64,000 bases of DNA, from positions 256,176-320,175 of IMG/VR virus record IMGVR_UViG_3300031857_000002. The stretch is one strand, 5' to 3'. The notes beneath the pieces are model-generated. The model did not search any database and was not told the DNA's origin. It was given only the letters and a program-made list of their open reading frames with translations. Shown here piece after piece: positions 1,573 through 64,000 of the stretch. The stretch's first letter is position 1. Every line of letters starts with the position of its first letter. The translations under genes and the position numbers were made by a program.

Positions 1573-2715
1573 ATGGAAAATTATCATCCCGAAACCTATT
1601 GCACCTATGCGTTTGGTGGCTATGCCAGTCACGAAAAATGGATATGTTGTGCCGGAACAGGCCAGTTCAACAGCTTTGCCGAAGTTAACCAAAGTGAAGA
1701 AATCCAACAACTGCGGCAAGCACTACAGCGTGGTGAGCGTCATCCCACCTGTGCAGTGTGTTGGGACGCAGAAGCGGCCGGGAACGCCAGTGCCAGGTCT
1801 GTAGGATCTGCTGATCGAGACTGGCAAAGGATTCAAATTGAATTTGCAGAACCCAAACTGCGACATCTTTGGATTGACAGTGGCAGTGTATGCAACTTGG
1901 CTTGCAGAATCTGCGAACCCAGATACAGTAGCAGTCTCTACAAAGAGCACAAGGATCGATTTGGGCATACCACTGTGCCTATTACCAAGACCAATGTGGC
2001 GTATTTGATCACAGAAGACTTTAGCCAAATCGAAAACATCATGATACTAGGCGGTGAGCCATTTCTGAACCTGGACTATTGTGCTGTGTTAGAGGAAATT
2101 GTGCGCCAAGGTCGTGCTGGCCAATGTACCTTGGTGTTTTTCAGCAATGGTACTGTGCGCCCAAGTCAACGTGTGATAGATTTGCTGGCGCAGTTTTCAC
2201 AAGTGGTATTGTATTTCAGCACTGATGCTGTGGGAGACCAATTTGGGTATGTACGTACCAATGGCATCTGGTCTCAGGTCATAGACAACATCGACTACAT
2301 TGCATCGGCAAGTATTCCGCAGCTCAGGCAGAACTTTCACATAACAGTGAGCGCATTGAATGTGATGTATCTAGATGAGTTACTCTCCTGGATGGCCGAG
2401 TATTATGGTGCTGGACAAGATCCTCGTGCGGTAATTGCCCAAGCCATGAGCGAACACCGAATAACCTACATGGTAACCAATCGTCCCTCGCACTACTCGT
2501 TTGGTATTTTTACTGATGCCCAGCGTCAACAGGTATTAACACATTTGGAACATAGTGCTTTTGATCTACAAGGTATTGCAAATCAAATTACCAACTACTC
2601 CTATACACCTACACATGCTGAAAAGTTCTGGTCAGAGACTGAGTGGACCAAACAGTACCAAGGTCTAGCAGTTGAACAATACCTACCAAGGTTGGTCAAC
2701 ATCTTGCAGTCGTAA
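1573..2715 (+). CDS. Radical SAM protein with N-terminal Cys-rich (twitch/SPASM-like) segment
   Basis: CNLACRIC (CxxxCxxC), ILGGEPF, FSNG, FSTDAVG; N-terminal C..CC..CAVC; start MENY 5 nt after TAAGTA. Confidence 0.85.
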   Translation: MENYHPETYCTYAFGGYASHEKWICCAGTGQFNSFAEVNQSEEIQQLRQALQRGERHPTCAVCWDAEAAGNASARSVGSADRDWQRIQIEFAEPKLRHLWIDSGSVCNLACRICEPRYSSSLYKEHKDRFGHTTVPITKTNVAYLITEDFSQIENIMILGGEPFLNLDYCAVLEEIVRQGRAGQCTLVFFSNGTVRPSQRVIDLLAQFSQVVLYFSTDAVGDQFGYVRTNGIWSQVIDNIDYIASASIPQLRQNFHITVSALNVMYLDELLSWMAEYYGAGQDPRAVIAQAMSEHRITYMVTNRPSHYSFGIFTDAQRQQVLTHLEHSAFDLQGIANQITNYSYTPTHAEKFWSETEWTKQYQGLAVEQYLPRLVNILQS

Positions 2716-2742
2716 AAAAAGGCTGCCGTAAGCAACCTTTTT
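2716..2742. terminator. Bidirectional intrinsic terminator
   Basis: AAAAAAGGCTGCCGTAAGCAACCTTTTTT between convergent genes. Confidence 0.7.
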
Positions 2743-2776
2743 TGGTGTGACCCCTGGGATGGAGTCAGCGGGTCTA

Positions 2777-3043
2777 TTAGACCAGGCCCATGGCCATAGC
2801 TTTGTAACCAGCGGCTACTAACTTGCGGCTTGGTTTGCCAATCACATATTCTGTAACTTTAACACCATTGCCAGCCACACGCTGGTTGGCATATACTGCA
2901 AAGCCAGCTTGGCGGATGCGGCTGACTTCGGCGCTGATGTTTTTAACACCAAAACGCTTTTCAGCTTGGCTAGCTGTAACTGTCTCGCCTTTGTGCAAAG
3001 CAGAGAACAATTTGTAAGTTTTTGTTTCAGGATTGAATCGCAT
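2777..3043 (-). CDS. Small helix-turn-helix DNA-binding protein
   Basis: VTASQAEKRFGVKNISAEVSRIRQAG is HTH-like; start at MRFN. Confidence 0.55.
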   Translation of the reverse strand: MRFNPETKTYKLFSALHKGETVTASQAEKRFGVKNISAEVSRIRQAGFAVYANQRVAGNGVKVTEYVIGKPSRKLVAAGYKAMAMGLV

Positions 3044-6988: not shown

Positions 6989-8116
6989 ATGCAATGTAAA
7001 TTTTTAAAACATGGTCTGGCTATCAGTTACGACCACGTGGTCAAGCCCTGTTGTGAATGGCAGCAGGATTCCAATTACCCAATTCAGAATCACATCAGTC
7101 AAGTTGACCTATCAACTTGGCATCAAAAAAACAAAGTTTTTGAGCAACAATTGGCCAACAATGAATGGCCTGTAGCCTGTGGTCAATGTCAGCACAGAGA
7201 ACAACAAAATCGTCAAGACAGCATAAGATTAAACGGCAAACAATCCTATGCTCATTACACCGAAGACGATATTACTTTGGAAATTCGTCCAGGCAATGTG
7301 TGTAACTTTAGCTGCCAAACTTGCTGGCCAGAAGCCAGCAGTCGTGTGAGTCAACATCATGCACAGGCAGGATTGATTAATATCAAGTCTATTGACAGTA
7401 AACAAATAGATAACTTTGACTTTTTACTACCGATTGCCTCAAGGATCAAAGATGTAGTGTTGCTGGGCGGGGAACCATTTTATGATCCTAACTGTAAAAA
7501 GTTTCTAGCCTGGTCACAACAAAATCTTCGCAGCCGCATCACAATGTTTACCAATGGTAGTGCGGTAGACTGGGATTGGGTTGATAGTTATCCTGGACGG
7601 ATCACCATGGTGTTTAGCATAGATGCTGTGGGCACCGCAGCCGAGTACATTAGATTTGGAACCGACTGGTCACAAGTTCTATCTAATTTTCAACAGGCTC
7701 AAGCACACGCCAAGGTAGATCTACGGGTAAACATCACTGCATCTGTGTACAACTACTACCACCTGGACCAGGTGATTGATTTGTTACTGCCACACTGGCC
7801 TACAGTAGTGACATTTGGCAGTCCCAGAATTGAGTATTTTTTAGAATCCTGTGTGCCGCTAAGGCATCGTACTGCAATAATTGATCGATTACAATTGGCA
7901 TGTGTGCGCATCATGAAAAGCACAGTACCACCAGATCAAAAAACCAATGCAATAAATGCACTAAAATCTATTATTACAAATTTAAAAGTCAAGGACTGGG
8001 ACCAAGACCAGTACACCGCGTTAAAAATCTATGTGCAAAAGATGGATCAGGTCAAACATGTAACTGTGAGAGATCACTGTGAATTTTTAGCTGATGTGTT
8101 AGATTTTTCCGAATAG
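6989..8116 (+). CDS. Radical SAM protein with N-terminal Cys-rich segment
   Basis: CNFSCQTC, LLGGEPF, FTNG, FSIDAVG; N-terminal C..PCC..CGQC. Confidence 0.85.
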   Translation: MQCKFLKHGLAISYDHVVKPCCEWQQDSNYPIQNHISQVDLSTWHQKNKVFEQQLANNEWPVACGQCQHREQQNRQDSIRLNGKQSYAHYTEDDITLEIRPGNVCNFSCQTCWPEASSRVSQHHAQAGLINIKSIDSKQIDNFDFLLPIASRIKDVVLLGGEPFYDPNCKKFLAWSQQNLRSRITMFTNGSAVDWDWVDSYPGRITMVFSIDAVGTAAEYIRFGTDWSQVLSNFQQAQAHAKVDLRVNITASVYNYYHLDQVIDLLLPHWPTVVTFGSPRIEYFLESCVPLRHRTAIIDRLQLACVRIMKSTVPPDQKTNAINALKSIITNLKVKDWDQDQYTALKIYVQKMDQVKHVTVRDHCEFLADVLDFSE

Positions 8117-9230
8117 CACCAGTATTTTTTTGATCGCTAATCCAGGCAGTGGCCCCTGGAAGATTTTTTTCTATTAGTTTTTTTGATATAGAACTATCTA
8201 ATATTTGTGCCACTGCTGCCTCTACAGGCAGTCTCAGCATTAACTTTAACACATCCAAATCACGTAACAAGGTCCAAGTTAGAGTATTACCTATGTGCCA
8301 GTGTTGCCAATCATTTACCAATACATTACATATCTCGTAAGCTAACCAACGAGGGTTTGTGGTAGTCAGTGTTGATTCAAATATTTTCTGGTGTTTGGGC
8401 AACATAAAATATTCATAGTGCAAACAATCAGGATGTGTTTTTAACAGTTCTGGAATACTGGTGCCGCGGCTGGCCAAATACATGTTGGCAGTTACCGGAC
8501 TTCGCAACATAAATTCATCACCAGGTGCACCAGACGCTAGTATTGTGGGTTCTAACCAGTGATGTATTTGATTGTATGCCCAAAACTTTTTCAAGTGATG
8601 CGAATTGTATTTCCAAAAGTGATCATAATCTATGTGAAGATAATCAACTGATTCGACCTCGGCACCTGCACGTTTGAGATAACTATATACCAGCAACGAA
8701 TCAACCCCGCCTGTTAAAAACGATCGTATGGGCAAGATATTGTGTTCAATAAAATTCCTAGTTCTGGCCAGTAGTATTTCATCAACTTGATCCAGCACTT
8801 GAGATTCAGTCAACAGGGCAAGATCAAGTGTGCCAATCACATTGAAGTTCCGTAAGGTAACTGCAAGATCCAAGGTAGCCGAAATCACGTTATTGGTCCA
8901 GGCAGTGTTGCTCAATGGCACAAGATTGGTGATTTCTTTTTGTTGTTCAAACCAGATAGGAAAACTGCGGTACTTGTCTGTTTTAATTTCCAACTGATCT
9001 GTGCTGATTGCAATTACACAAAAGTTCCCCAACAGCTCAGGGCATTGTTGTTGTAATATATCAGGCAGAATCTCTAGCATTGTACCTGATTCGGAATAAC
9101 CTTTGTACACCACAAACTGATCTCCCACTATGGTCTGATTCCATCCAGCATCGGTATTGACAGTTATGCCATGCCAACGCCACTGGTGCGAAAAATCTAG
9201 ATTATCACTGTGGGAGATCGAAAAAAACAT
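8052..9230 (-). CDS. Asparagine-synthase-like PP-loop ATP pyrophosphatase
   Basis: SFLTGGVDSLL (SGGxDS-like), SGAPGDEF; N-terminal GNFCVI...TDKYRSFP resembles degenerate GATase-II part. Confidence 0.6.
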   Translation of the reverse strand: MFFSISHSDNLDFSHQWRWHGITVNTDAGWNQTIVGDQFVVYKGYSESGTMLEILPDILQQQCPELLGNFCVIAISTDQLEIKTDKYRSFPIWFEQQKEITNLVPLSNTAWTNNVISATLDLAVTLRNFNVIGTLDLALLTESQVLDQVDEILLARTRNFIEHNILPIRSFLTGGVDSLLVYSYLKRAGAEVESVDYLHIDYDHFWKYNSHHLKKFWAYNQIHHWLEPTILASGAPGDEFMLRSPVTANMYLASRGTSIPELLKTHPDCLHYEYFMLPKHQKIFESTLTTTNPRWLAYEICNVLVNDWQHWHIGNTLTWTLLRDLDVLKLMLRLPVEAAVAQILDSSISKKLIEKNLPGATAWISDQKNTGAIRKNLTHQLKIHSDLSQLHV

Positions 9231-21123: not shown

Positions 21124-21846
21124 TTATGACCAATATTTGGATGAATCTAAACTGTCCCAGTATTTCTTGTTATTTCGGTTAATAAAGTTCTTGATTAGAT
21201 ACTTGCCCATTCCAAGATATCCCATCTTCTTGAATCTACGACTATCCTGTCCAAAGTGATGTCGAACAATTTTAAACTTTCGAGGACTATACTTCCTTGA
21301 CAAAAAGTAATCCTCAGAGGTTGCAAACTGTTCAGGAAACCCGCCAAACTCGTCAAACTTATCTTTGCGTGTTAGCATGAATGCACCAACTGCAAAAGGT
21401 GAGAAAAATTTCAGTGTGTGATTTATGGTATTAAAAAGAGTGAATCCAACTATGGCCCGCATGTCACGATCATAACATTTGATGTTTAGCCCAACCAGGT
21501 CTAGATTCTTTGATTGAATTTTGTCAACTGCATCTTGAATCACAGTATTTTTAAAGAAGCGAACGTCAGCGTCAATAAACAAGATATAAGGAGTAGTGAC
21601 TAATCTTGCTCCGTTGTTCTTGGCAACACTAACAGGGCCACCATCAATGATTTCAACGTTCAATCCTGAGCTGTTATCTTGTATAACTTGTCTAGTATTG
21701 TCAGATGAACAATCAGCAATAATAATTCTAGTGTCACCAATGTTTTGTGCTCGCAATGAGTTTAACAAATGATGAATATAATTTTCTTCATTCTTGCAAG
21801 GTACTACTATAGTGATTTTGTCACTTAATTTTGTTGTCGTTTGCAT
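21124..21846 (-). CDS. Glycosyltransferase family 2
   Basis: TIVVPCKNEE, IIADCSSDNT, AKNNGA, ILFIDAD, SED. Confidence 0.9.
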   Translation of the reverse strand: MQTTTKLSDKITIVVPCKNEENYIHHLLNSLRAQNIGDTRIIIADCSSDNTRQVIQDNSSGLNVEIIDGGPVSVAKNNGARLVTTPYILFIDADVRFFKNTVIQDAVDKIQSKNLDLVGLNIKCYDRDMRAIVGFTLFNTINHTLKFFSPFAVGAFMLTRKDKFDEFGGFPEQFATSEDYFLSRKYSPRKFKIVRHHFGQDSRRFKKMGYLGMGKYLIKNFINRNNKKYWDSLDSSKYWS

Positions 21847-22796: not shown

Positions 22797-23450
22797 CTAC
22801 TCAGGTACTCTGGTCCAGGCTATGAGTGCTCGTTTGCCCGGGATACCATTTGCTAGAAAGTTGTCACTGGTGTGAAACTTGAATCTAGCGGCAGCAAACA
22901 TACTGCCTTTCTTCCACTTGAAGATATCTTCTATGGTAAACCAGTCAAACAAATCACCGGGAATGTGACTGAAATACTGTTGTCTTGTGGCAGCATCTAT
23001 TGTGGGATTTTCATACGGCGGCACATCTTTTGTGTACTCATGTGGTTCTTTGATGATGCTGCCTTCCTTGAACACTATGGTATGGCTGTCATAGGTGTCC
23101 AAGGGAATGATCAAGGTCCAAGCGGGCACAGTGGGTTCGGGACTTTTTTTCCAGCCACTGGCCACATCGCTGTGAACTCGATAAGGATCAACACAGTCAA
23201 AAATGTGTATTTGTTCAAAGAACAGGTCCTGACCAAATGCCTCTTGAAACTTGGGTGCCAGTATTTCAACTACCTTGGCAAAGTGTGAGTCATAGTAATC
23301 AAACACATAATAGTCACCGGACTTGACAATTTCTCCTGACGGCGTGGGGTTGAAATTTTCATGCGGCTTCACTGCCATGACCATGGATTCAATAGTGTCT
23401 ATTTCAGCATCAGACAAAAAGTTGTCAATAATTTTTGAGTCAAAGTTCAT
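22797..23450 (-). CDS. Putative 2OG-Fe(II) oxygenase-fold protein
   Basis: RVHSD (HxD), TLIIPLD, distal KFHTSD; start MNFD 5 nt after TAAATA. Confidence 0.5.
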   Translation of the reverse strand: MNFDSKIIDNFLSDAEIDTIESMVMAVKPHENFNPTPSGEIVKSGDYYVFDYYDSHFAKVVEILAPKFQEAFGQDLFFEQIHIFDCVDPYRVHSDVASGWKKSPEPTVPAWTLIIPLDTYDSHTIVFKEGSIIKEPHEYTKDVPPYENPTIDAATRQQYFSHIPGDLFDWFTIEDIFKWKKGSMFAAARFKFHTSDNFLANGIPGKRALIAWTRVPE

Positions 23451-24752: not shown

Positions 24753-24781
24753 ATTATATACTCAATTGTACAAAAAGTCAA
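24753..24781 (-). promoter_or_regulatory. sigma70 promoter giving leaderless uvsE mRNA
   Basis: TTGACT-17-TATAAT, ATG 6 nt downstream, no SD. Confidence 0.75.
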
Positions 24782-25701: not shown

Positions 25702-26216
25702 ACGTGTCCTGTAATTTGCAATGTATATCGATCTTCCAGCCCAATATTGGCAGCCATGTGTGGTGCATCGTACACCCATTCTACAGTTGTACCTGCTGTC
25801 CATTTTACATAAGGCTGACCAATAACTTCTAGGTAGTGCCCTGATTGCCAGTCCTCTAACAACACTAATGCACGTCGGATTGACTGTTCTTGTCCTTGCA
25901 GATTAAACAATTCAATGTAACGTTTGTACAGGTCTTGATGTACCGGCATTACAGTACCTGTGGGCATGCGATAAAACGCAAGACCAATATCTTTCCATCC
26001 CATCTCAGTATAGATCTTAATAAACTTATCAGCCCATGCTGGTAAACGATGGCGCATGTCGCAAAGATCCCCGCATATTTTAGTGTGATATCCTTGTGCT
26101 AACCACTGAGACACGCTGACAGGATCGTTAAAAGGCTCCTGAATGTAATCAAGAGCCTTAAACTCATCGTCCCAGAATACAGGAAGATGATACTTATTGA
26201 CCACGTGTGTTGCCAT
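25698..26216 (-). CDS. 2OG-Fe(II) oxygenase (Asp/Asn beta-hydroxylase-like)
   Basis: GTVMPVHQD, W..G, PHMAANIG..DRYTLQITG. Confidence 0.7.
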   Translation of the reverse strand: MATHVVNKYHLPVFWDDEFKALDYIQEPFNDPVSVSQWLAQGYHTKICGDLCDMRHRLPAWADKFIKIYTEMGWKDIGLAFYRMPTGTVMPVHQDLYKRYIELFNLQGQEQSIRRALVLLEDWQSGHYLEVIGQPYVKWTAGTTVEWVYDAPHMAANIGLEDRYTLQITGHV

Positions 26217-49881: not shown

Positions 49882-50601
49882 TCACGTATTTAGCAGATAG
49901 AACTGCTCAACACGGCGCCACCACAGATCTCTGTAGCGATCAAACTCTGCACCTTCCAACACAAACTCTTGATATTCTGGGGGTTTAATGATGTTGAACT
50001 GCTCGTCAACATCTGGTTTGACGCACATCAAGATCACACCCTTGCGTATGCGTGTGCCATGCACTTCATTGTGTGCTTCTGCATAGGCGCATAACTGCAC
50101 AAAATAGTCCTCAATCCATTCACGCCGTTTGGGCTTGTTGCTTTGCTTGTAGTCCAAGATTGATTCTTCATTCAGATGAATCCCGGCGCCGTCTGTTGTG
50201 CCTGCGTAGATCCCGGGAAAGTATAGCGGAACTTCGATGCCCCAAAATTCGTTCACATTCTTCAAACCCTTTTCCACCACCACATGTGCCATGGCATGAC
50301 TGGCCCAGCTGTAAGGATTTGTAGTGCGTTCTTTGATTTCACCTGTCTTTACATAGTCCTCAAGATAGGTGTGCATACGTGTGCCTCGATTGGCAGCTTC
50401 CGTAGTGATCTGCTGTGCTTTTTCTGCACCCACACTACGACGCCATCGGTTCAGTGCTTCCCGGCTTTCTTCGCTTTTGGTTTTGTCAAGTATTGTGGTA
50501 ACTGAAGGTAAATTTTTGCCATCTGGTGTGGAGTAAAAACGTTTGCCTTCAACTACTACTCGGGGAATGGGTTGGTAATCAAATTTAGGATTGTACATCA
50601 A
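49882..50601 (-). CDS. PD-(D/E)xK exonuclease
   Basis: PSVTTIL, RGT.MH, E...Y, YAGTTD, ILDYK, QLCAYA.A. Confidence 0.88.
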   Translation of the reverse strand: MMYNPKFDYQPIPRVVVEGKRFYSTPDGKNLPSVTTILDKTKSEESREALNRWRRSVGAEKAQQITTEAANRGTRMHTYLEDYVKTGEIKERTTNPYSWASHAMAHVVVEKGLKNVNEFWGIEVPLYFPGIYAGTTDGAGIHLNEESILDYKQSNKPKRREWIEDYFVQLCAYAEAHNEVHGTRIRKGVILMCVKPDVDEQFNIIKPPEYQEFVLEGAEFDRYRDLWWRRVEQFYLLNT

Positions 50602-51985
50602 GTTTCTTAAAGAATGCCACCCGGTGAGTTATTTCCAGGGAGAATTGTTTTTCTATATCAATGTCATTAGTCATGATATTGATCAATTCTTTGTCAGGGG
50701 CATCTAGTAGATTATACAGTCTTTCATTAAGTAAAGCAAATGATTGGTCAGTCTTTTTGTCAAAATAGGCATTATGGCTTAGAAATTTTAACCATTGTTC
50801 ATGACTTTCGGGCATGTTCTTTAATTCTTCAATTGTGGAATTTATAAAATTAAAAAGCACCCGGGTATGGTCAGGATATTTCTTAAAGATGCCATGCCCG
50901 ACACAGATCTGTAAAAACTCAATCAACGCTGGTCGATATCGTATAGGCAAGGCTTCTACGTCCAGGTGGCGGGTCTGATTTGTAAGATTAATAGGTTTTA
51001 TAGGAAATGAATAATGCTGTTGATCAAACCAGGCTGACCAATAGGTCATAAATTCGTCAATGTACATGATGTTGTTGAGGCTGAACACTGGTGTGATCAA
51101 ACAACGCCATCTAGGAGTATATGTTTTCTTTCCAGACACAATACTCAGAGTGGTTTGATGACTCATTAGTGTGGCTAAATTGTTTTCAATCTTTTCAAAT
51201 TTAGCCGGCCACCGCAGATATTGATAATTGTCGCCCACTGAGTCAATGCTTAAATTGATATCTACATCTCTAAACTGTGACATCTTGCTCATGAGATCGT
51301 AGCCTGGCCGTACTGACAGTGCAGTGGTCACACGCAGATGCACACGAGGTGCAATTCCTTGAGCAATCATCCAGTTCAAAAGTTTTTTCATGCCTGGCTG
51401 CACAAGACTTTCCCCACCAATGAAATGCACATAAAAATGCTCTACCTCGGGCAATTTTTCTAATATGGTTGTGGTAATCAACTTCCAGTGTTCAGGACTT
51501 GTACTAATATCTATTTCATACTGTTCGCTCACAGGAGTATTGGTTATTCTAGCCCAGGTCGAGCTTTCTGTTTTTGAACAACTCCTGCAGGCTAGATTAC
51601 AAAAGTTACTGAACTTGACCCGCAGTTCAAACTCAGGAAGTGCTTGTTTTTCTACAAAACTCCTTAATCTATCTTCAATGTATCCCAAGAAACCATTCAC
51701 ACGTTCACTAGCACCACTGTGGTCTTCTTCAGATTTACAGCGCCAGCATGCTTCAGGCCATTGTTCATTTAACTGTTGCTCTTTGATATCAGCAAATGGA
51801 TCTGCTCCTGCACTGGGCACAAAAGTTCTGTCGTCAAGATTGCAACAACAGGTTTTGTACACGGGTTCTGAACTCAGCTCTGAATAACGTGTGTCTAGTG
51901 TGACATAGGGATATATGCACAATGTGGGATTTTGTTCAGCCCATAACAGTCGTTGGTCTACAGACTTTTTCAGTGCGTCGGTCAT
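50585..51985 (-). CDS. Radical SAM protein with N-terminal Cys-rich segment
   Basis: CNLACRSC, FIGGE, LSIDSVG; CIYP..TCCC..CWRC. Confidence 0.85.
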   Translation of the reverse strand: MTDALKKSVDQRLLWAEQNPTLCIYPYVTLDTRYSELSSEPVYKTCCCNLDDRTFVPSAGADPFADIKEQQLNEQWPEACWRCKSEEDHSGASERVNGFLGYIEDRLRSFVEKQALPEFELRVKFSNFCNLACRSCSKTESSTWARITNTPVSEQYEIDISTSPEHWKLITTTILEKLPEVEHFYVHFIGGESLVQPGMKKLLNWMIAQGIAPRVHLRVTTALSVRPGYDLMSKMSQFRDVDINLSIDSVGDNYQYLRWPAKFEKIENNLATLMSHQTTLSIVSGKKTYTPRWRCLITPVFSLNNIMYIDEFMTYWSAWFDQQHYSFPIKPINLTNQTRHLDVEALPIRYRPALIEFLQICVGHGIFKKYPDHTRVLFNFINSTIEELKNMPESHEQWLKFLSHNAYFDKKTDQSFALLNERLYNLLDAPDKELINIMTNDIDIEKQFSLEITHRVAFFKKLDVQS

Positions 51986-52302
51986 ACTCGAAAACTTTCT
52001 CCGCAACCGCAACGATCACGCTCATTGGGATTGCGGAATTCAAATCCTTCATTTAGGCCGTTGCGCACAAAGTCCACAGTTACGCCTTGCAAGTAGGCAC
52101 AACTCTTGGGATCTACATAAATTTCACAGCCGTTACAGCTAAAGCATTGATCTTCAGTTTTGGGTGCATCAACATATTCCAACACATAGGCCAGGCCTGA
52201 ACAGCCTGTGGTACGAACACCTAGTCTGATGCCTACACCATGCCCGCGACGTTGGAGTGTTTGTTTTATCTTTCTAGCCGCAATGTCAGTTACTGATACC
52301 AT
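51982..52302 (-). CDS. iscA: Fe-S cluster A-type carrier IscA
   Basis: GCSGLAY, VDP.S, DF...G..GF.F.NPN, CGCGESF. Confidence 0.95.
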   Translation of the reverse strand: MVSVTDIAARKIKQTLQRRGHGVGIRLGVRTTGCSGLAYVLEYVDAPKTEDQCFSCNGCEIYVDPKSCAYLQGVTVDFVRNGLNEGFEFRNPNERDRCGCGESFRV

Positions 52303-53294
52303 GATTTTTTAGTGCAATATGTGTTGCAAGCAGTTAGTTGTTTAGGGGTGTCAAATGTGTCAATTATCTGATTGAACCACACTACGCCTTTTTCCAATGT
52401 GTCTACAGTGGCTCCGTCCCTGAGCACATGAACATCTTCCACATATGTTGTGCCAGGCTTGCTGAAATTGCCAATGAAACAGCACGGATCTATATTGCCG
52501 TCGGATGCAATATACATACTCACTGGTGACCAAATGTGTAGGGCCTTGCACTCAACTTCATCGTAGGGTGCCTGGGCCAGTTTACGAGGTCCGTGCAGAT
52601 TGATCCATTCTTCTGTGATTTGATCTGGGAAAGTTTTACCTGATTCTTTTTTGAGTTCAAATATTTTTTGGCCGTGTTGATTGTATACTGGTCCCCAGTC
52701 TCGGCCATGATGTCTCAAATTGAATTTTTTAAATCCCAGTGCTTCACTGCGTTCACGTGCTTCGTTGATCTGATGACGATTGTGATCAAATTCAGTCATG
52801 CACCAATTGGCATGCCCACCGGCTGCAATAAAGATTTGAGCATTTTTGATCACTGTTTCAAACACTGTGTTTTGTCGGTAGATATGATGAGTGTCTTCAA
52901 GACCGTCAATGCAAAACTCCATAACCACTCCTGTGGCTGCCAAGGATTGCCAAAATTCACGACCTTGGGCGCCGCCATTGGTGGATGCAGAAAGTGTTAA
53001 TCCAGGTTTTCCAGGTTTAAATTTTTGTCCGTGTTGTCTAAACCAAGCCAATATACTGGGTGTTTCAGGATTCATCACTAGGTCGCCAAGGTTTCCATTT
53101 ATTAACACACGTTTCAGTTGTGCAACCACAGTCTCAGGCACAATTGTTTTGATTTTTTCCAAGGTCAAATTGGTTTCTTTATAACCAAAATTGTAGGGAA
53201 ATCCATGATAGTTGCGCATGCACATGGGGCACCTTGCGTTACACAAGGAACTGATTTCTATTTGTAATTCTCGAATGTCTGAGATGTTAATCAT
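52290..53294 (-). CDS. Radical SAM protein with C-terminal twitch/SPASM-like domain
   Basis: CNARCPMC, GNLGD, STNG, CIDGL; C-terminal C..YI..DG..DPCC..C...C. Confidence 0.88.
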   Translation of the reverse strand: MINISDIRELQIEISSLCNARCPMCMRNYHGFPYNFGYKETNLTLEKIKTIVPETVVAQLKRVLINGNLGDLVMNPETPSILAWFRQHGQKFKPGKPGLTLSASTNGGAQGREFWQSLAATGVVMEFCIDGLEDTHHIYRQNTVFETVIKNAQIFIAAGGHANWCMTEFDHNRHQINEARERSEALGFKKFNLRHHGRDWGPVYNQHGQKIFELKKESGKTFPDQITEEWINLHGPRKLAQAPYDEVECKALHIWSPVSMYIASDGNIDPCCFIGNFSKPGTTYVEDVHVLRDGATVDTLEKGVVWFNQIIDTFDTPKQLTACNTYCTKKSWYQ

Positions 53295-54100
53295 GATGTA
53301 TTTAAGATATATTTGCTGGCTACCATTTCAGCAAACCGTCTGTTGGTCTCTGCATTGTAATGCCCGCCTGGTAACTCACCTCTTGCACTACTGGCATAGG
53401 TTACAATATTGTTAATGTGCAACCAATCAATGCCTGTGTCTTCCCAGGCTCCACGTATGTCAGGAAATTGGTTTAATAATTTGATACCACCAGCTGGGTC
53501 TAGAACAGAACTAACAAAGTTGTGGGTAGAAAACACATGTATGTTCTTGACTCCGTGACTGCGACATATGGCTTGTGAAATCATCACTGTGACTAGAAAT
53601 CTATAAAAATTAGATTCCCATCCTTCTAGCAGTTTTAAGTTAACAAAATAATCAGTTTCAGGTCCTAATCGAGGCACTGTGCCAGCATTTACAAACCTTG
53701 GTAAAATTTTATCCTGATACTGATTATTGAACAATACTTCTCGATCAATAGAACTAAACTGCAATATCACAGTGTCTGGTTTAATCTTTATTAGATCTTG
53801 TGCCAGCTTGTAAGGCCAGTAACTGGGGCCTGACTTGGCCGCAGACTGATTAATTACTGTTTGTTGAGTTATTTCTGCCAACTGCCCTGGCCAACATAAC
53901 TTTGCTTCCAGGTCATGAAGTACCTTGTCACCTAGTGTTCTATGAAGTTCTTGACTTTCTTTTATTGCAATATCACTACCGCACCAGTTGTGATATTTGA
54001 CTAGATTGGATGTGCGTTCTGTGTGGCCTGGCCAACTGGGGTACAAATAATCAGCTAGTTCACTGCCCGAACTAAAGCTGTCACCTAGCACATAGATCAT
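53291..54100 (-). CDS. SGNH/GDSL-like hydrolase/acyltransferase
   Basis: VLGDSFS block I; N.S...G; GGHYN block V. Confidence 0.6.
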   Translation of the reverse strand: MIYVLGDSFSSGSELADYLYPSWPGHTERTSNLVKYHNWCGSDIAIKESQELHRTLGDKVLHDLEAKLCWPGQLAEITQQTVINQSAAKSGPSYWPYKLAQDLIKIKPDTVILQFSSIDREVLFNNQYQDKILPRFVNAGTVPRLGPETDYFVNLKLLEGWESNFYRFLVTVMISQAICRSHGVKNIHVFSTHNFVSSVLDPAGGIKLLNQFPDIRGAWEDTGIDWLHINNIVTYASSARGELPGGHYNAETNRRFAEMVASKYILNTS

Positions 54101-54474
54101 TGATGTCTTTTGCGATAGTCTTCTACTGCCGCTTTGATTGCATCTTCTGCAAGTATTGAACAGTGAATTTTAACAGGGGGGAGGGCAAGCTCATCAGCAA
54201 TCTCGCTATTTTTGATCGCTGCCGCTTCGTCAAGTGTGCGTCCTTTGACCCATTCAGTAACCAGCGAACTCGACGCAATCGCTGAGCCGCAACCATATGT
54301 TTTAAATCTTGCATCTGTGATTACTCCATCTTTTACTTTTATTTGTAACTTCATCACATCACCGCAGGCAGGTGCTCCTACCATGCCTGTACCTACATCT
54401 TCGTCGCCTTTTTCAAAGCTACCCACGTTGCGTGGATTCTCATAATGATCTACTACTTGATTGGAATATGCCAT
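54097..54474 (-). CDS. iscU: Fe-S cluster scaffold IscU
   Basis: DHYENPRNVG, APACGDVM.LQI, FKTYGCGSAIAS, LPPVKIHCS. Confidence 0.97.
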   Translation of the reverse strand: MAYSNQVVDHYENPRNVGSFEKGDEDVGTGMVGAPACGDVMKLQIKVKDGVITDARFKTYGCGSAIASSSLVTEWVKGRTLDEAAAIKNSEIADELALPPVKIHCSILAEDAIKAAVEDYRKRHQ

Positions 54475-54475
54475 A

Positions 54476-54787
54476 TTATTGTGTACAGGTTCTTTCGCGG
54501 TAGATTTTACCGTCGAGTGTTTGGATTTCTTTCCAAGGCGTGCAAGACTCTTGCGGCACGTAGACGGGTTGTTGTTGCACAATCACTGTTTCTGCTTGTG
54601 CAGGTCTATTGGCAATAACAGCACCTACTACCCCGCCAATGATTAACGGGGCGACCCAATTATTATGACCATAATGGCCGTAGTATCTGGCATGTCCATA
54701 CGGACCGTGGTGGCCATGTCGCCAATGTTGTGCTAGTGCAGGCACTGTGACCATTAACAATGCTAGTGAAATTAAGATCTTTTTCAT
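54476..54787 (-). CDS. Secreted His/Gly/Tyr-rich small protein
   Basis: Signal peptide, HWRHGHHG..., hydrophobic GG segment, two Cys. Confidence 0.65.
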   Translation of the reverse strand: MKKILISLALLMVTVPALAQHWRHGHHGPYGHARYYGHYGHNNWVAPLIIGGVVGAVIANRPAQAETVIVQQQPVYVPQESCTPWKEIQTLDGKIYRERTCTQ

Positions 54788-57734: not shown

Positions 57735-58403
57735 TTATTTACCAAAGTGACTGAAATCTTGTCTGTTATGGTATAAATTGCCTACTTCTTCATCACTGTC
57801 AATAAGTGTTTGTAGTGCTGTATTTAGTTGATTCTGATTGGCAAGAGAAGGGATCACTTGGAAGTTTGACGGCAGGACTCCGAGATCTTCAGACACTAGT
57901 TCTAGATCAAATCTAGTGTTGATCGCTTGCAATCGTTGATTGGTAGTTAATATAGAGATTGCGGCGTTTTTTAGTTCCGCAATATTTATTGGTATTTCTC
58001 CTGTGAAGCAGTCTTCAGAAAACAGTGGATAACGATCGTCGGTGTACTTTTTAACAAAATGCCATTGTTGGGTTTTTACGGCGCAATAAAAACTTGTGAT
58101 CTGAGCAAAAACATTCCGACGATGTAGTCGTATCAGTGTACATTGATTCAATAGAGGTTGTAGGAATTGCTGAATTTCTGGTGTGTATTGGTGAGAACTG
58201 CACATGACCTTGGCAACAAAGTTGCCTGACGACCTATTAATAAAATTCACAAATGATATTGCATGCTCTACATATAAAAAGGCTTCGTCGAAATTTGTTA
58301 GTCCTTTTTCTTGTGCAATCCAATCGCATAGTGCCGTAGATCGTGTTCTAAATGATGAAAAGACGATAATAGACTTATTGTCTGGCAAATCAATATTGAT
58401 CAT
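57735..58403 (-). CDS. Sulfotransferase-like (Stf0-like) P-loop protein
   Basis: IIVFSSFRTRSTAL (5'-PSB-like), IRLHRRN...Q..S (3'-PB-like). Confidence 0.55.
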   Translation of the reverse strand: MINIDLPDNKSIIVFSSFRTRSTALCDWIAQEKGLTNFDEAFLYVEHAISFVNFINRSSGNFVAKVMCSSHQYTPEIQQFLQPLLNQCTLIRLHRRNVFAQITSFYCAVKTQQWHFVKKYTDDRYPLFSEDCFTGEIPINIAELKNAAISILTTNQRLQAINTRFDLELVSEDLGVLPSNFQVIPSLANQNQLNTALQTLIDSDEEVGNLYHNRQDFSHFGK

Positions 58404-60289: not shown

Positions 60290-60290
60290 G

Positions 60291-61212: not shown

Positions 61213-61294
61213 TCGATCAAGAGCCTTTGGATTATTTAGTGCTTTTTAGATTCTAATAAATATCTATTACTGCTTTTAAAGCCAAGGAACACAA

Positions 61295-63163
61295 ATGACC
61301 AGTCAAATCAATCCATCAAATATCGATGCTACATATCCTGTAGCAGGGCAACCCAATAACACACAGGGTTTCCGCGATAATTTCACTGCCACACAGACCA
61401 ATTTCAACTATGCCGCAACTGAAATAACAGATTTACAAAACAAAGCAGTACTAAAGGCAGCACTCACAGGCACCACGTTGGACAACAACATGAATGATGC
61501 ACTGCTTTATGCTGCCAAGATACAAGATTTTAGCGCAACTGCGGTGAATCTTACAACCACTTCGGGACCAGTCACAGTGGATTATACTACCGGACATTAT
61601 CAAAGTCTCTCTCCGGCCACTGGCAGTGTTACTTTGGGCTTTACAAAATGGCCTGCGGCAAACAATTATGGCTTTTTAAGACTGCGAATTTACATTACCA
61701 ACACCGCCTACACAGTGACTTTGCCTGCGGCTGCCACTCAAGGCATTGCTGGTATTCAAGGACTGTCAGGCAGCACAATCACCTTTGGTGCCACCGGCTA
61801 TTACGAATTTGGTTTTAGCACAGTAGATGGTGGTACCACAATCACAGTGTTTGATTTGAATCGTCCATTGAGCTATTATACTAATCCTGTAACAATCAAC
61901 AGCAACGTAGCCAGTACCAGTACCACTTCTGGGGCATTGACTGTGGCAGGTGGGGTTGGAATCAATGGTAATCTTTATGTGGCAGGCAACGTTGTTGGAA
62001 ACTTTGTAGCTACAACTCAAACATTTGCCGGTAATTTAACCGGCGGAAACTTGTTGACAGCCGGAATAACAAGCGCCACTGGTAATGTCACTGGTGGTAA
62101 TTTACGTACTGCTGGGCAAGTAAGTGCCACAGGCAATGTAACTGGTAACTTTTTTATTGGCAACGGATCAGGACTGACTGGTATTGTTGTGTCAGGCGGT
62201 ACATCTATTGTCAACGGAAATAGTAATGTTGGAGTAATTGCCAATAGTAATGTCACTATCAGCGTTGGCGGAACATCAAATGTTGCAGTATGGGCCAACA
62301 CTGGTGGGATCGTAACTGGTTTACTCAGTGCAACAGGTAATATCACTGGTGGTAATTTACGTACCGCTGGACAGATATCAGCAGGCGGTAATATCACTGG
62401 CGGTAACATTATTGCTGGGGTAGGTGTAGGAGTAGCTGGTGATGTGGCAGTAGGTGGTGTAATATTTGCCGCTGGCAACATCACTGGATCTTATTTACTT
62501 GGCAACGGATCTTTTTTAACAGGATTGTCTAGTTCAACAAGGATCGCATCAGGTACCACAGAAATAGCCATTGACGCACCAAGTGGTAATATTCAAACAA
62601 CAATTGGTGGCACTGCAAACGTAGTGGTGTTCACCACAAACGGTCTAGGTGTAGCAGGGTTTGTAGTGGCCACTGGCAACATCACTGGTAGCAATGTTAC
62701 CGCTAGTGGTAATGCTATTGTTAGTGGATTTGTTAGTGCTGTAGGCAACGTCTCTGGCGGTAACATCCGAACTGCTGGATTAATCACTGCCACTGGTAAT
62801 ATTACCAGTGGTAATATTGGTGTAACAGGAAATGTCAGTTTAACTGGTAATGTTATTTCTGGAAATTTGACTACTAGTTCTCAAGTGGTAGCACTTGGTA
62901 ATGTAACTGGCGGAAATATCAGAACCGACGGTCAGGTGCTGGCGCTAAGTGCCACATCTCTGCCAGCAGGTGGTGTAGCTGGCGCTGGATATGTGTTTTC
63001 ATCTACTGCAAACTTTGGCGTATTTTTTGGATCTGGTGTGCCAACACTGAGTGCTGCCAAAGGATCTTTGTATCTTAGAAGCGATGGCACTACCACCAAT
63101 GATCGTATGTATGTAAATACCAATGGCGTCACGACCTGGACTGCTGTAATTACTGCGGCTTAA
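61295..63163 (+). CDS. Tail-fibre-like virion protein with G-N-x-T-G-G-N repeats
   Basis: N-term IDATYPVAGQ.N.TQGFRDNF; ~15 GN[IV]TGGN repeats (62020-62940); TAAATA and SD upstream. Confidence 0.75.
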   Translation: MTSQINPSNIDATYPVAGQPNNTQGFRDNFTATQTNFNYAATEITDLQNKAVLKAALTGTTLDNNMNDALLYAAKIQDFSATAVNLTTTSGPVTVDYTTGHYQSLSPATGSVTLGFTKWPAANNYGFLRLRIYITNTAYTVTLPAAATQGIAGIQGLSGSTITFGATGYYEFGFSTVDGGTTITVFDLNRPLSYYTNPVTINSNVASTSTTSGALTVAGGVGINGNLYVAGNVVGNFVATTQTFAGNLTGGNLLTAGITSATGNVTGGNLRTAGQVSATGNVTGNFFIGNGSGLTGIVVSGGTSIVNGNSNVGVIANSNVTISVGGTSNVAVWANTGGIVTGLLSATGNITGGNLRTAGQISAGGNITGGNIIAGVGVGVAGDVAVGGVIFAAGNITGSYLLGNGSFLTGLSSSTRIASGTTEIAIDAPSGNIQTTIGGTANVVVFTTNGLGVAGFVVATGNITGSNVTASGNAIVSGFVSAVGNVSGGNIRTAGLITATGNITSGNIGVTGNVSLTGNVISGNLTTSSQVVALGNVTGGNIRTDGQVLALSATSLPAGGVAGAGYVFSSTANFGVFFGSGVPTLSAAKGSLYLRSDGTTTNDRMYVNTNGVTTWTAVITAA

Positions 63164-64000
63164 CCAATTTCCACAATTCAGGAAACGTCTCGGCTAGATC
63201 TTGTTTGCGCAACAGGTCTAGCTTTTTTGTTGTTGACCAGAACTTTGCCCACAATTCAGTTTGATTATCTAACGGCATGTCCATAAAGTCTAGTATGCTG
63301 GCAACTTGATGACTGGCTCCTGCTAGATGTGTTCTAACTTGTGCTTTGACTTGATCGGGCAACACACGCACATTGATATGTTGTGGATGATGCACCATGT
63401 TAAAGAAGTAGCCTATGCCACGCTGTTTAAAATACTGCTCAATCTCTTCAAGATACAAGATATTGTAGGCACATACAGTGACACAAACGCACATGCTGAT
63501 ATTAGAGTGTTGGCGTACTAGTTCTTGATAACGATCCAAGTTCTTTTCTACTGTGCTCCAAGTTTCCCCATATCGTATGTAATCAAAATGTGGACCAATA
63601 CCATCTATGCTGATGTCTAATGCAACATGTTTGAATTGTGTTAATGTATCAATGTATCGTTGATTCCAAATTGTACCATTGGTATTGATGTGCAGACTTT
63701 GATCTTGAGCTAGATTTTTATCCACAGCTTGTTGTAGGATATTAAACACATTGCTCAACAGCATGGGCTCAGCACCATAGATGTCATAGTACCGGACATC
63801 AGTTAACCATTCTTCCAACTCATTCCACAGGCGAGTGTTTTCAGGTTCATAACTGCTTTTGATCCTGCCCCAACTGGCTAGATACTTCTTATAGTCAGGT
63901 TCTTGCTTGTGTGCTTCTAGTTCCCAATAGTCGCGATACCATTTGCTTGACACTTCGGGCCAACATGTTCTGCAGGCTAAGTTACAGGTGTTACCAGGTT
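63150..64000 (-). CDS. Radical SAM protein (5' end outside the window)
   Basis: Window end translates PGNTCNLACRTC; YGAEP, INTNG, ISIDG. Confidence 0.85.
   Translation of the reverse strand, partial: PGNTCNLACRTCWPEVSSKWYRDYWELEAHKQEPDYKKYLASWGRIKSSYEPENTRLWNELEEWLTDVRYYDIYGAEPMLLSNVFNILQQAVDKNLAQDQSLHINTNGTIWNQRYIDTLTQFKHVALDISIDGIGPHFDYIRYGETWSTVEKNLDRYQELVRQHSNISMCVCVTVCAYNILYLEEIEQYFKQRGIGYFFNMVHHPQHINVRVLPDQVKAQVRTHLAGASHQVASILDFMDMPLDNQTELWAKFWSTTKKLDLLRKQDLAETFPELWKLVKPQ

What the first reader, a model, noticed from the sequence alone, without database searches (positions are those of the whole stretch)
1573..64000. Dispersed late-expressed tailoring toolkit: five radical SAMs plus oxygenases, PP-loop, SGNH, sulfotransferase, GT-like
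Seen: CxxxCxxC proteins at 1573, 6989, 50585, 52290, 63150; HxD...H oxygenase-like at 22797, 25698, 30232; Asn-synthase-like 8052; SGNH 53291; Stf0-like 57735; GT-like 27436. Many are single-gene insertions among structural genes, several antisense to neighbours and several with late leaderless promoters. Inference: a distributed pathway that modifies virion proteins/glycans or DNA. No precursor peptide or substrate is identifiable.
Basis: partly seen in the sequence, partly recalled or inferred. Interest (0 to 1): 0.65.

Follow-up and report, generated by a model that had tools for sequence, protein, structure and literature searches.

The report
Jumbo phage with 22 radical-SAM enzymes
The five radical-SAM genes in this window are part of a set of 22 in a 320-kb freshwater jumbo phage that also carries its own iron-sulfur assembly genes and many sugar-tailoring enzymes, which points to a conserved, uncharacterised virus-encoded pathway that most likely builds a heavily decorated carbohydrate.

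Summary
The window is the last 64 kb of a 320,175-bp jumbo myovirus contig.

- **Radical-SAM genes.** All five CxxxCxxC genes are radical-SAM enzymes. Four belong to NCBIfam NF033640, which has an N-terminal twitch domain. The whole genome has 17 members over the curated cut-off and 22 radical-SAM genes in all.
- **Main locus.** It lies outside the window, at genome 95-120 kb, and is syntenic in four related jumbo-phage contigs.
- **Other claims that hold up.** The 2OG oxygenases are supported (fold proven for 30232). So are the Asn-synthase-like PP-loop protein, the Stf0-like sulfotransferase and the C-terminal GT-B domain of the GT-like protein.
- **Claims that do not.** The SGNH call stays inconclusive. 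"Insertions among structural genes" is wrong, because the neighbours are replication, repair and auxiliary genes.
These are IscU and IscA between the radical-SAM genes, a StrB1-like amidinotransferase, UDP-glucose dehydrogenase and a GT2.
- **Promoter motif.** An NTAAATA-N4-5-ATG motif, which would give leaderless transcripts, is real. Expression timing is untested.
- **Best reading.** A conserved, radical-SAM-rich carbohydrate assembly and tailoring pathway. DNA hypermodification is disfavoured.

Neither function nor substrate is proven.

The parts
1573..2715 (+). Radical-SAM enzyme of the N-terminal-twitch family NF033640 (380 aa)
   Evidence: PF04055 41.6 bits. NF033640 205 bits against a cut-off of 170. 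Orthologues are 78-90% identical and 380 aa long. dN/dS is 0.087 against the L002 orthologue.
6989..8116 (+). NF033640 radical-SAM enzyme, a very divergent lone branch. A TTAAATA motif lies 4 nt before its ATG.
   Evidence: NF033640 175.5 bits. Motif at 6978-6984. Long branch in the tree.
8052..9230 (-). Asn-synthase-like PP-loop (TGGVDS) protein without an N-terminal Cys nucleophile. Candidate ATP-dependent amidation enzyme.
   Evidence: Atlas features 0.96-0.97 to Asn_synthase/NAD_synthase clusters and TM 0.63-0.70. No Pfam, NCBIfam or PDB sequence hit.
21124..21846 (-). Family-2 glycosyltransferase
   Evidence: PF00535, E 2.7e-21.
22797..23450 (-). Fe(II)/2OG dioxygenase-like paralogue of 30232. 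A GTAAATA motif lies 5 nt before the second ATG.
   Evidence: Invariant HxD...H in alignment A3. Motif at 23456-23462. No Pfam hit.
24778..25701 (-). StrB1-like amidinotransferase, catalytic Cys retained (GGGFHC). The likely start is the internal Met that abuts the stop of 25698-26234.
   Evidence: PDB 1bwd at E 3.3e-62 and AGAT at 5e-28. 36% identity to the S-SCSM2R inosamine amidinotransferase. Sequence.
25698..26234 (-). Probable 2OG-Fe(II) oxygenase, paired with the amidinotransferase as in cyanophage S-SCSM2R
   Evidence: tblastn 30% identity, E 1e-18, to ORF308 annotated as 2OG-Fe(II) oxygenase and adjacent to ORF309, an amidinotransferase. No Pfam hit.
26194..27432 (-). UDP-glucose dehydrogenase
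   Evidence: phrog_9148, E 8.8e-85.
27436..28743 (+). GT-B-like glycosyltransferase candidate, one of five paralogues in the genome
   Evidence: Paralogues found. Alignment A2 has invariant E266, E278 and K279. The C-terminal domain matches GT-B enzymes. The N-terminal half is unmodelled.
30232..30894 (-). Fe(II)/2OG dioxygenase (PhyH/SnoN-like fold)
   Evidence: AF2 pLDDT 89. Foldseek matches SnoN, PhyH, AndA and AsqJ at E 2e-9, probability 1.0.
50585..52012 (-). NF033640 radical-SAM enzyme (divergent)
   Evidence: NF033640 181 bits. Pieces are present in metatranscriptome contigs.
51982..52302 (-). A-type Fe-S cluster carrier (IscA/HesB)
   Evidence: PF01521, E 1.7e-18.
52290..53294 (-). Radical-SAM enzyme of a second, 3-member family with a C-terminal twitch-like Cys motif. 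A TTAAATA motif lies 4 nt before its ATG.
   Evidence: PF04055 29.3 bits. Paralogues at genome 53979 and 54983. Cys pattern. Motif at 53299-53305.
53291..54100 (-). SGNH/GDSL-like protein (unproven), lying between a radical-SAM gene and IscU
   Evidence: Family alignment A4 has invariant G6, D7, S8 and G12 and near-invariant H247. One of 31 relatives hits Lipase_GDSL_2. PDB 4rsh at E 0.04.
54097..54582 (-). IscU-type Fe-S scaffold
   Evidence: PF01592 NifU_N, E 7.9e-52.
57735..58403 (-). Stf0-like sulfotransferase candidate
   Evidence: PF09037, E 0.025. Atlas features 0.95-0.97 and TM 0.66-0.76 to Stf0/NodH clusters.
63150..64000 (-). NF033640 radical-SAM enzyme, 5' end cut off by the end of the contig
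   Evidence: NF033640 228 bits over model positions 118-397. Sister of genome 136784.

Best explanation
The window's genes are the dispersed members of a genome-wide, radical-SAM-rich pathway that assembles and tailors a carbohydrate.

Shown by tool results:
- The phage encodes 22 radical-SAM enzymes. Seventeen belong to one ancient family with an N-terminal twitch domain.
- It carries an IscU scaffold and an IscA carrier that could load their Fe-S clusters.
- It carries enzymes of nucleotide-sugar and glycan chemistry: UDP-glucose dehydrogenase, a DegT aminotransferase, GT2, five GT-B-like paralogues, a carbamoyltransferase and three amidinotransferases. An Asn-synthase-like amidotransferase, a Stf0-like sulfotransferase and several Fe/2OG dioxygenases are supported more weakly.
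- The core is a conserved island at genome 95-120 kb, next to tail-fibre-like genes.

Inferred:
- Sugar units are made from UDP-glucose or UDP-glucuronate and amino-sugar precursors and joined by the glycosyltransferases.
- They are then decorated by amidino, carbamoyl, sulfate, amide and hydroxyl groups.
- The different radical-SAM subfamilies each carry out one radical step at an unactivated C-H position. Candidate reactions are oxidation, epimerisation, dehydration, decarboxylation and C-C bond formation, as the twitch enzymes BtrN, AprD4 and BlsE do on sugars.

Where the product ends up is not known. It could be virion fibres, the infected cell's envelope, or a free molecule.
For: - Seventeen NF033640 members exceed the cut-off. 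All keep CxxxCxxC, GGEP and the N-terminal Cys motif.
- The N-terminal region weakly matches the twitch domain of BtrN.
- Five island subfamilies each have 65-81% identical orthologues in four related phage contigs, while the subfamilies are only 20-30% identical to each other.
- dN/dS is 0.04-0.10 where it could be computed (4 radical-SAM comparisons across 3 genes plus the amidinotransferase and carbamoyltransferase; dS was saturated for three other island radical-SAM genes).
- IscA and IscU lie between radical-SAM genes.
- Sugar enzymes found: Ugd, GT2, DegT at genome 119.7 kb with E 2e-64, carbamoyltransferase, amidinotransferases, GT-B-like fold.
- The 2OG oxygenase's best structural match is SnoN, a sugar-acting epimerase.
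- In two Bacteroidota genomes, NF033640 genes sit with GDSL, GT2-methyltransferase, GT-C and PhyH genes.
- Cyanophage S-SCSM2R has the same oxygenase-amidinotransferase pair inside a block of five glycosyltransferases, an aminotransferase and a radical-SAM gene.
- Accessory GT-like and methyltransferase genes vary between the conserved core genes, as in surface-glycan loci.
Against: - No NF033640 member has a known substrate, and no close solved structure exists.
- Known amidinotransferases act on small amines, not on polymers.
- No flippase, polymerase or lipid-carrier enzyme was looked for or seen.
- Several calls rest on weak or indirect evidence: GT-like, Stf0, AsnS-like and SGNH.
- Four conserved island proteins remain unidentified.
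- One bacterial cluster sits beside a secreted fibre-like protein, which fits a protein substrate equally well.
- The dispersed window genes could serve several unrelated pathways.
Confidence: 0.45

Rival explanations
1. Protein or peptide modification. The radical-SAM enzymes and 2OG oxygenases modify phage structural proteins (for example tail fibres) or small precursor peptides after translation, and the glycosyltransferases then glycosylate the modified residues. This would resemble collagen-type hydroxylation plus glycosylation, or RiPP maturation.
For: - Weak secondary NCBIfam matches are mostly to peptide maturases such as PapB, GggB, CcpM, SkfB, YhhB and DynA.
- The island abuts tail-fibre-like genes in this phage and in L027.
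- A bacterial NF033640 cluster is followed by a T9SS-secreted Peptidase_S74 fibre protein.
- A tail-fibre-like ORF at genome 232879-235557 has 17 collagen-like GXY triplets.
- Among the better GT-like structural matches are protein glycosyltransferases: SdgB, EarP, OGT and POGLUT2.
Against: - No precursor peptide and no RiPP recognition element was found. The N-terminal domain is a Cys-rich twitch motif instead.
- The nucleotide-sugar enzymes, carbamoyltransferase and amidinotransferases are not explained.
- The peptide-maturase matches are far below their cut-offs (15-35 bits against 300-650).
Confidence: 0.22
2. Free secondary metabolite. The genes make a diffusible aminocyclitol or guanidino pseudo-oligosaccharide during infection, rather than a glycan attached to a surface.
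For: - The window's amidinotransferase is closest to inosamine-phosphate amidinotransferase StrB1 (E 3e-62).
- Twitch radical-SAM enzymes, aminotransferases, carbamoyltransferases and GT-B enzymes are the standard aminoglycoside toolkit, by general knowledge of the BtrN, StsC and TobZ families.
- A metallophosphoesterase lies nearby.
- The authors of the cyanophage S-SCSM2R paper flagged the same trio as 'antibiotic synthesis genes' (PMC12801897).
Against: - No inositol- or 2-deoxy-scyllo-inosose-forming cyclase was identified.
- No export or self-resistance gene was seen.
- Seventeen paralogues exceed the needs of any known aminoglycoside pathway.
- The benefit to a lytic phage is unclear.
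Confidence: 0.13
3. No single pathway. The radical-SAM expansion and the other enzymes are independent auxiliary or counter-defence genes gathered by a large genome, each acting on a different host molecule.
For: - The window copies are scattered, on both strands, among unrelated genes.
- Two window copies (6989 and 50585) are long lone branches without close relatives in the tree.
- Campylobacter phages also carry 11-12 radical-SAM genes of other families, with no known common role (PMC2853527).
Against: - The core island is tightly syntenic in at least four relatives.
- The same enzyme classes co-occur with NF033640 in bacteria.
- GT-like and oxygenase paralogues link the window to the island.
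- Fe-S assembly genes sit among the radical-SAM genes.
Confidence: 0.12
4. DNA hypermodification. The enzymes decorate phage DNA bases to evade restriction.
For: Radical-SAM enzymes, glycosyltransferases and PP-loop enzymes occur in known phage DNA-modification pathways (general knowledge). T4 beta- and alpha-glucosyltransferases are among the structural matches of the GT-like protein.
Against: - No thymidylate-synthase-family hydroxymethylase and no TGT/DpdA was found in the genome.
- The 8052 protein matches QueC only at E 0.24.
- The bacterial contexts of NF033640 are not DNA-related.
- One caveat applies: the record is about 92% complete.
Confidence: 0.05

Closest known systems
NCBIfam NF033640 'twitch domain-containing radical SAM protein' (N_Twi_rSAM)
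   Same: Four window genes and 13 others in the genome exceed the curated cut-off. They share the N-terminal Cys motif, CxxxCxxC and GGEP. Bacterial members also occur in tandem sets of 2-4.
   Different: The family has no characterised member that I could find. Here it is expanded to 17 copies in a virus. No such expansion was found in the paper library searched.
Campylobacter phages CP220/CPt10 (11-12 radical-SAM genes, clusters each with an amidinotransferase; PMC2853527)
   Same: Both are T4-related myoviruses with many radical-SAM genes in clusters that include an amidinotransferase. Function is unknown in both.
   Different: Their radical-SAM genes are not NF033640 members, scoring at most 31 bits. 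This phage has about twice as many, plus IscU/IscA and many glycan enzymes.
Cyanophage S-SCSM2R cluster ORF301-310 (PMC12801897)
   Same: It has an adjacent 2OG oxygenase and inosamine-type amidinotransferase homologous to window 25698 and 24778. These lie with a radical-SAM gene, an aminotransferase (homologue at genome 163807) and glycosyltransferases.
   Different: It has one radical-SAM gene rather than 22, the phage lineage is different, and there are no Fe-S assembly genes in the cluster.
Sugar-acting twitch radical-SAM enzymes (BtrN, BlsE) and viperin, MoaA and SkfB, the nearest solved structures
   Same: The radical-SAM core and an auxiliary-cluster twitch motif are shared. BlsE acts on a glucuronate nucleoside, and this phage makes UDP-glucuronate.
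   Different: Similarity is only remote (E 1e-10 to 1e-2). The twitch motif is N-terminal here rather than C-terminal.
Virus-encoded glycosylation machinery (chlorovirus and mimivirus capsid or fibril glycans; mycobacteriophage virion glycosylation)
   Same: The virus carries its own nucleotide-sugar and glycosyltransferase genes next to structural genes. This comparison rests on general knowledge, and on Freeman et al. 2023 as cited within PMC12801897.
   Different: To my knowledge none of those systems relies on radical-SAM enzymes. Virion glycosylation has not been shown here.

Membership tests
Radical SAM superfamily (PF04055) | CxxxCxxC cluster motif and a match to the family model | tested here: met
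   The motif is present in all five genes. PF04055 E-values run from 1e-5 to 2e-10. Two genes are over the gathering score and three fall 0.2-3.3 bits below it. GGEP is conserved.
NF033640 N_Twi_rSAM | Score over the curated 170-bit cut-off | tested here: met
   Scores are 205, 175.5, 181 and 228 bits for 1573, 6989, 50585 and 63150. The cut-off is not met for 52290-53294 (28.7 bits), which belongs to another small family.
NF033640 N_Twi_rSAM | Auxiliary-cluster (twitch) Cys motif placed N-terminal to the radical-SAM core | tested here: met
   C34, C95 and C98 are at least 90% conserved ahead of C149, C153 and C156 in alignment A1. Profile positions 37-79 match the BtrN twitch region at E 0.009. 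Cluster binding itself is not testable here.
Fe(II)/2OG dioxygenase (PhyH-like) | Double-stranded beta-helix fold with an HxD...H triad | tested here: met
   Fold shown for 30232. The triad is invariant in 30232, 22797 and genome 97901. The Pfam models do not match. For 25698 there is only an annotated homologue and a motif, so that gene is inconclusive.
Asparagine synthase B / PP-loop ATP pyrophosphatase | SGGxDS PP-loop and the Asn_synthase fold | tested here: inconclusive
   TGGVDS is present. The Atlas model gives TM 0.63-0.70 to Asn_synthase clusters. There is no Pfam, NCBIfam or PDB sequence hit.
Asparagine synthase B / PP-loop ATP pyrophosphatase | N-terminal Cys nucleophile of the glutaminase domain | tested here: not met
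   The protein starts MFFSIS. If it is active, it would use ammonia or another donor.
SGNH/GDSL hydrolase | Blocks I (GDS), II (G), III (GxND) and V (DxxH) | tested here: inconclusive
   Blocks I, II and the His of block V are conserved in alignment A4. Block III Asn is not evident. One of 31 relatives hits PF13472. PDB GDSL protein at E 0.04.
Stf0 sulfotransferase (PF09037) | Match to the family model and the sulfotransferase fold | tested here: inconclusive
   PF09037 scores 14.5 bits against a cut-off of 22. Atlas features 0.95-0.97 and TM up to 0.76 to Stf0/NodH clusters. PAPS binding is not testable here.
GT-B glycosyltransferase | Two Rossmann-like domains with a nucleotide-sugar site in the C-terminal one | tested here: inconclusive
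   The C-terminal domain (residues 156-388) matches EXT1, FUT9/11, TarM and T4 BGT at Z 8-9.3 and SdgB at E 0.02. The N-terminal half has pLDDT below 50.
Amidinotransferase (StrB1/AGAT) | Homology across the fold and the C-terminal catalytic Cys | tested here: met
   PDB 1bwd at E 3.3e-62. The GGGFHC motif is retained.
ISC Fe-S assembly (IscU, IscA) | Match over the Pfam gathering score | tested here: met
   NifU_N scores 175 bits and Fe-S_biosyn 67 bits. A cysteine desulfurase partner is absent from the phage.
RiPP maturase system | Adjacent precursor peptide gene and a recognition (RRE) domain | tested here: inconclusive
   No precursor was recognised. The N-terminus is a Cys-rich twitch motif. 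No dedicated small-ORF or RRE search was run.
Phage DNA hypermodification pathway | dNMP hydroxymethylase (thymidylate-synthase family) or DpdA/TGT base-exchange enzyme | tested here: not met
   PF00303 and PF01702 were not found in the genome. The record is about 92% complete.

The most novel reading that the evidence does not exclude
A cosmopolitan clade of freshwater jumbo phages encodes an autonomous pathway, self-provisioned for Fe-S clusters, in which five or more distinct subfamilies of an uncharacterised N-terminal-twitch radical-SAM family act in sequence on a carbohydrate scaffold. The scaffold is also amidinated, carbamoylated, sulfated and hydroxylated. The product would be a new class of viral glycan or pseudo-oligosaccharide made by new radical sugar chemistry.
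Probability: 0.3. Interest if true: 0.85.

Novelty: new variant of a known kind. Interest (0 to 1): 0.68.

Why it matters
- **Scale.** Radical-SAM enzymes are costly and oxygen-sensitive. A virus that keeps 22 of them under purifying selection, together with its own IscU/IscA, is investing heavily in one kind of chemistry.
- **Unknown chemistry.** NF033640 has no known function. Here its subfamilies come as a conserved, ordered set with identifiable partner enzymes. Some orthologues have thousands of environmental homologues, so it is a tractable entry point for finding new radical reactions.
- **Viral glycobiology.** If the product is a virion or cell-surface glycan, autonomous viral glycosylation, so far known from giant eukaryotic viruses and a few phages, would extend to radical-SAM-tailored sugars.
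- **Ecology.** The phage occurs in lake metagenomes from many studies, so the pathway may bear on host recognition or superinfection in freshwater systems.

Tried and rejected
- Megablast of 20 kb against cultured phages gave no match.
- The search for related loci in viral contigs failed twice: the single protein found no relatives, and alignment A1 was too divergent to seed a search.
- Pfam, NCBIfam and PHROGs gave nothing for 22797, 25698, 30232, 8052, 53291 and 27436, even at E 10. For 57735 they gave only sub-threshold Pfam hits, including PF09037 Stf0 at E 0.025.
- phmmer against PDB gave nothing useful for 8052, 27436 and 30232, or for the conserved island proteins at genome 96975, 108092 and 95088.
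- hhalign of 25698 against the 30232 family was not significant.
- I tested whether the Campylobacter-phage radical-SAM genes are the same family. They are not.
- I looked for a fuller radical-SAM support set. No IscS, MetK or flavodoxin was found.
- I considered circular closure to complete the truncated gene at 63150. No ORF bridges the contig ends and there is no terminal repeat.
- Metatranscriptome contigs cover parts of 50.5-56.4 kb, but they cannot show transcript starts, strand or timing, and DNA carry-over cannot be excluded.
- Literature searches for radical-SAM expansions in jumbo phages found nothing on this system.

Full report
**What the window is**

The window is the last 64 kb (genome 256,176-320,175) of a single 320,175-bp virus record. 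The record has 44% GC, no terminal repeat and an estimated completeness of 92%.

It is a jumbo myovirus. PHROGs identify a tail sheath, portal, baseplate hub and wedge, and a family-B DNA polymerase. The portal is about 50% identical to those of Agrobacterium phage Atu_ph07, Pseudomonas phage PA5oct and Sinorhizobium phage Phosso. No cultured phage is close at the DNA level.

Near-identical sequence occurs in lake and freshwater metagenomes from many studies.

**The radical-SAM genes**

All five claimed genes match PF04055. Four exceed the curated cut-off of NCBIfam NF033640, 'twitch domain-containing radical SAM protein': 1573-2715+, 6989-8116+, 50585-52012- and the truncated 63150-63998-.

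Searching the whole genome changes the picture.
- Twenty-one intact ORFs of 150 aa or more carry CxxxCxxC, and the copy truncated at the contig end is a 22nd.
- Seventeen places exceed the NF033640 cut-off.
- All-against-all BLAST shows one large paralogous family and a second family of three, which includes window 52290-53294.
- Two singletons complete the set: one with an N-terminal SPASM domain and one of 658 aa.
- The total is 22.

In the 17-member alignment, CxxxCxxC, GGEP and several other core residues are invariant. A Cys motif (C...CC...CxxC) lies N-terminal to the core. That N-terminal region weakly matches the C-terminal twitch domain of BtrN, which suggests that the auxiliary-cluster domain has moved from the C-terminus to the N-terminus. 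The 52290 family has the conventional C-terminal version.

The nearest solved structures are remote: 8vpo, viperin, SkfB, BlsE and MoaA, at E 1e-10 or weaker.

**The core lies outside the window**

Eight of the radical-SAM genes sit in an island at genome 95-120 kb. The island also holds the following.
- A carbamoyltransferase.
- An amidinotransferase (AGAT and StrB1 at E about 1e-12).
- Three paralogues of the window's GT-like gene.
- A paralogue of the window's oxygenases.
- A DegT-type sugar aminotransferase at the island's edge (E 2e-64).

The island is syntenic at 40-87% amino-acid identity in a 328-kb and a 183-kb metagenome contig. It is also syntenic in two contigs (183 and 148 kb) binned into a 'Haliscomenobacter sp.' MAG, each with six NF033640 genes.

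One island gene (genome 102355) has more than 7,400 homologues, and the best 120 are all at least 77% identical.

A tree shows five island subfamilies. Each is tightly conserved across the four relatives, and the subfamilies are separated from one another by very long branches. In-genome duplicates exist: 103641 with 110750, 39316 with the 101030 group, and window 63150 with 136784. Bacterial members interleave with the phage ones (a quick tree with several long branches, so only the starred groups should be trusted).

dN/dS is 0.04-0.10 where it could be computed (four radical-SAM comparisons across three genes, plus the amidinotransferase and carbamoyltransferase); dS was saturated for three other island radical-SAM genes. 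The genes are therefore maintained, not decaying.

**The other claimed genes**

- **30232-30894.** It folds with high confidence (pLDDT 89) into an Fe(II)/2OG dioxygenase. The best matches are SnoN, PhyH, AndA and AsqJ.
- **22797 and genome 97901.** They align with 30232 and share the invariant HxD...H.
- **25698-26234.** Its only match among cultured phages is ORF308 of cyanophage S-SCSM2R, annotated as a 2OG-Fe(II) oxygenase.
- **8052-9230.** The Atlas places it with Asn-synthase families by sequence features and by structure. It has a PP-loop and lacks the N-terminal Cys nucleophile.
- **57735-58403.** It is Stf0-like by a sub-threshold Pfam hit and by the Atlas.
- **27436-28743.** Only the C-terminal domain could be modelled. 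Nearly all of its structural matches are GT-B glycosyltransferases, including GT10 fucosyltransferases and the T4 glucosyltransferases.
- **53291-54100.** It has only 32 relatives among 1.84 billion cluster representatives. The family conserves SGNH blocks I and II and the distal His, but library support is marginal.

- 24778-25701 is a StrB1-like amidinotransferase (E 3e-62) with the catalytic Cys retained. It abuts the 25698 oxygenase exactly as ORF309 abuts ORF308 in S-SCSM2R. There the pair lies among five glycosyltransferases, an aminotransferase and a radical-SAM gene.
- 26194-27432 is a UDP-glucose dehydrogenase.
- 21124-21846 is a GT2.
- 51982-52302 is an IscA-type carrier and 54097-54582 an IscU scaffold. 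Both are interleaved with two radical-SAM genes.
- No cysteine desulfurase, SAM synthetase or flavodoxin was found, so sulfur, SAM and reductant would come from the host.

**Genomic setting and promoters**

The window's neighbours are not structural genes. They include the following.
- The RNR large subunit, an ATP-dependent DNA ligase and UvdE.
- A PstS-like binding protein and a metallophosphoesterase.
- ClpX, and ClpP (identified through a homologue).
- Small early genes.

Two promoter-like motifs are strongly enriched upstream of starts.

The first is a sigma-70-type TTGACC-N17-TGCTATAAT element followed by a leader and a strong Shine-Dalgarno sequence. It occurs about 35 times and lies ahead of small ORFs.

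The second is [GAT]TAAATA, which resembles the T4 late promoter. It occurs 125 times, 63 of them within 60 nt of a start. Its spacer to the ATG peaks sharply at 4-5 nt (20 of 66), which would give leaderless transcripts. It precedes the following.
- Window 6989, 52290-53294 and 22797.
- Two other NF033640 genes and a GT-like paralogue elsewhere in the genome.
- The portal gene, but also the DNA ligase gene.

'Late' is therefore plausible but untested. Contigs from four metatranscriptome runs cover parts of 50.5-56.4 kb, including radical-SAM genes and IscU. They cannot prove transcription or timing.

**Context in bacteria**

Among 300 other Bacteroidota genomes sampled, three carry tandem sets of 2-4 NF033640 or NF033640-like genes; in two of them at least one copy clears the 170-bit cut-off.
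- One chromosomal set is flanked by five PhyH-type and one WelO5-type 2OG enzymes, a methyltransferase, a GDSL hydrolase, a B12-radical-SAM gene and a T9SS-secreted fibre-like protein.
- Another set is flanked by a GDSL hydrolase, a methyltransferase-GT2 fusion and a GT-C membrane glycosyltransferase.

**Interpretation**

The evidence best fits a conserved pathway that builds and heavily decorates a carbohydrate. The radical-SAM subfamilies would each supply one distinct radical step, with IscU/IscA supporting cluster loading.

A protein or peptide target remains a serious rival, especially the tail fibres. One fibre-like ORF carries a collagen-like stretch.

A free aminocyclitol-like metabolite is possible because of the StrB1-like enzymes.

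DNA hypermodification is disfavoured, because the usual entry enzymes are absent.

Campylobacter phages with 11-12 radical-SAM genes and clustered amidinotransferases are the nearest published parallel (PMC2853527). Their genes belong to other families.

No paper in the library describes this expansion.

Noticed in passing
window 51982-52302 (-) and 54097-54582 (-): A phage-encoded IscA-type carrier and an IscU scaffold are interleaved with two radical-SAM genes. No IscS, MetK or flavodoxin was found in the genome.
   Followed up: yes
window 5485, 5975, 6417, 38907, 39358, 39689 (all - strand); about 35 copies genome-wide: A nearly identical sigma-70-type promoter (TTGACC, 17-nt spacer, TGCTATAAT) with a leader and a strong Shine-Dalgarno sequence lies ahead of small ORFs. 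These are presumably early genes read by the host polymerase.
   Followed up: partly
window 31946-33136 (-) and 9230-9940 (-): The phage encodes ClpX (AAA_2 plus a ClpX zinc finger) and a ClpP-like protease. ClpP was identified through a 65%-identical homologue carrying PF00574 on a related contig.
   Followed up: partly
window 20060-21061 (-): A PstS-like phosphate-binding protein (PBP_like_2), an auxiliary gene typical of phages from phosphate-poor waters. Related contigs carry it too.
   Followed up: no
window 63150-64000 and contig start: The contig ends inside a radical-SAM gene. The two contig ends do not join into an ORF and there is no terminal repeat, so the genome is incomplete at this end.
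   Followed up: yes
L029 and L030 (NZ_JBBAKG010000001.1 and ...003.1, 'Haliscomenobacter sp.' MAG): Two contigs of 183 and 148 kb in a bacterial MAG carry the syntenic phage island, with six NF033640 genes each. They are probably mis-binned jumbo phages and may hint at the host.
   Followed up: partly
genome 232879-235557 (+), outside the window: A tail-fibre-like ORF with 17 consecutive collagen-like GXY triplets. It is a conceivable substrate for hydroxylation and glycosylation.
   Followed up: no
genome 76833-91160 (+), outside the window: A single ORF of 4,775 aa lies next to the baseplate genes.
   Followed up: no
window 61295-63163 (+) and genome 223770-225290 (-): Two ORFs share a very similar N-terminus (MTS.INP.NID..YPVAGQ.NN.QG). 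They look like alternative tail fibres with a common attachment domain.
   Followed up: no
L025 (Vibrio phage K566, 161.5-168.3 kb and 177.9 kb): A cultured 255-kb Vibrio jumbo phage carries five NF033640-like genes, four of them clustered. It could serve as an experimental model for the family.
   Followed up: partly
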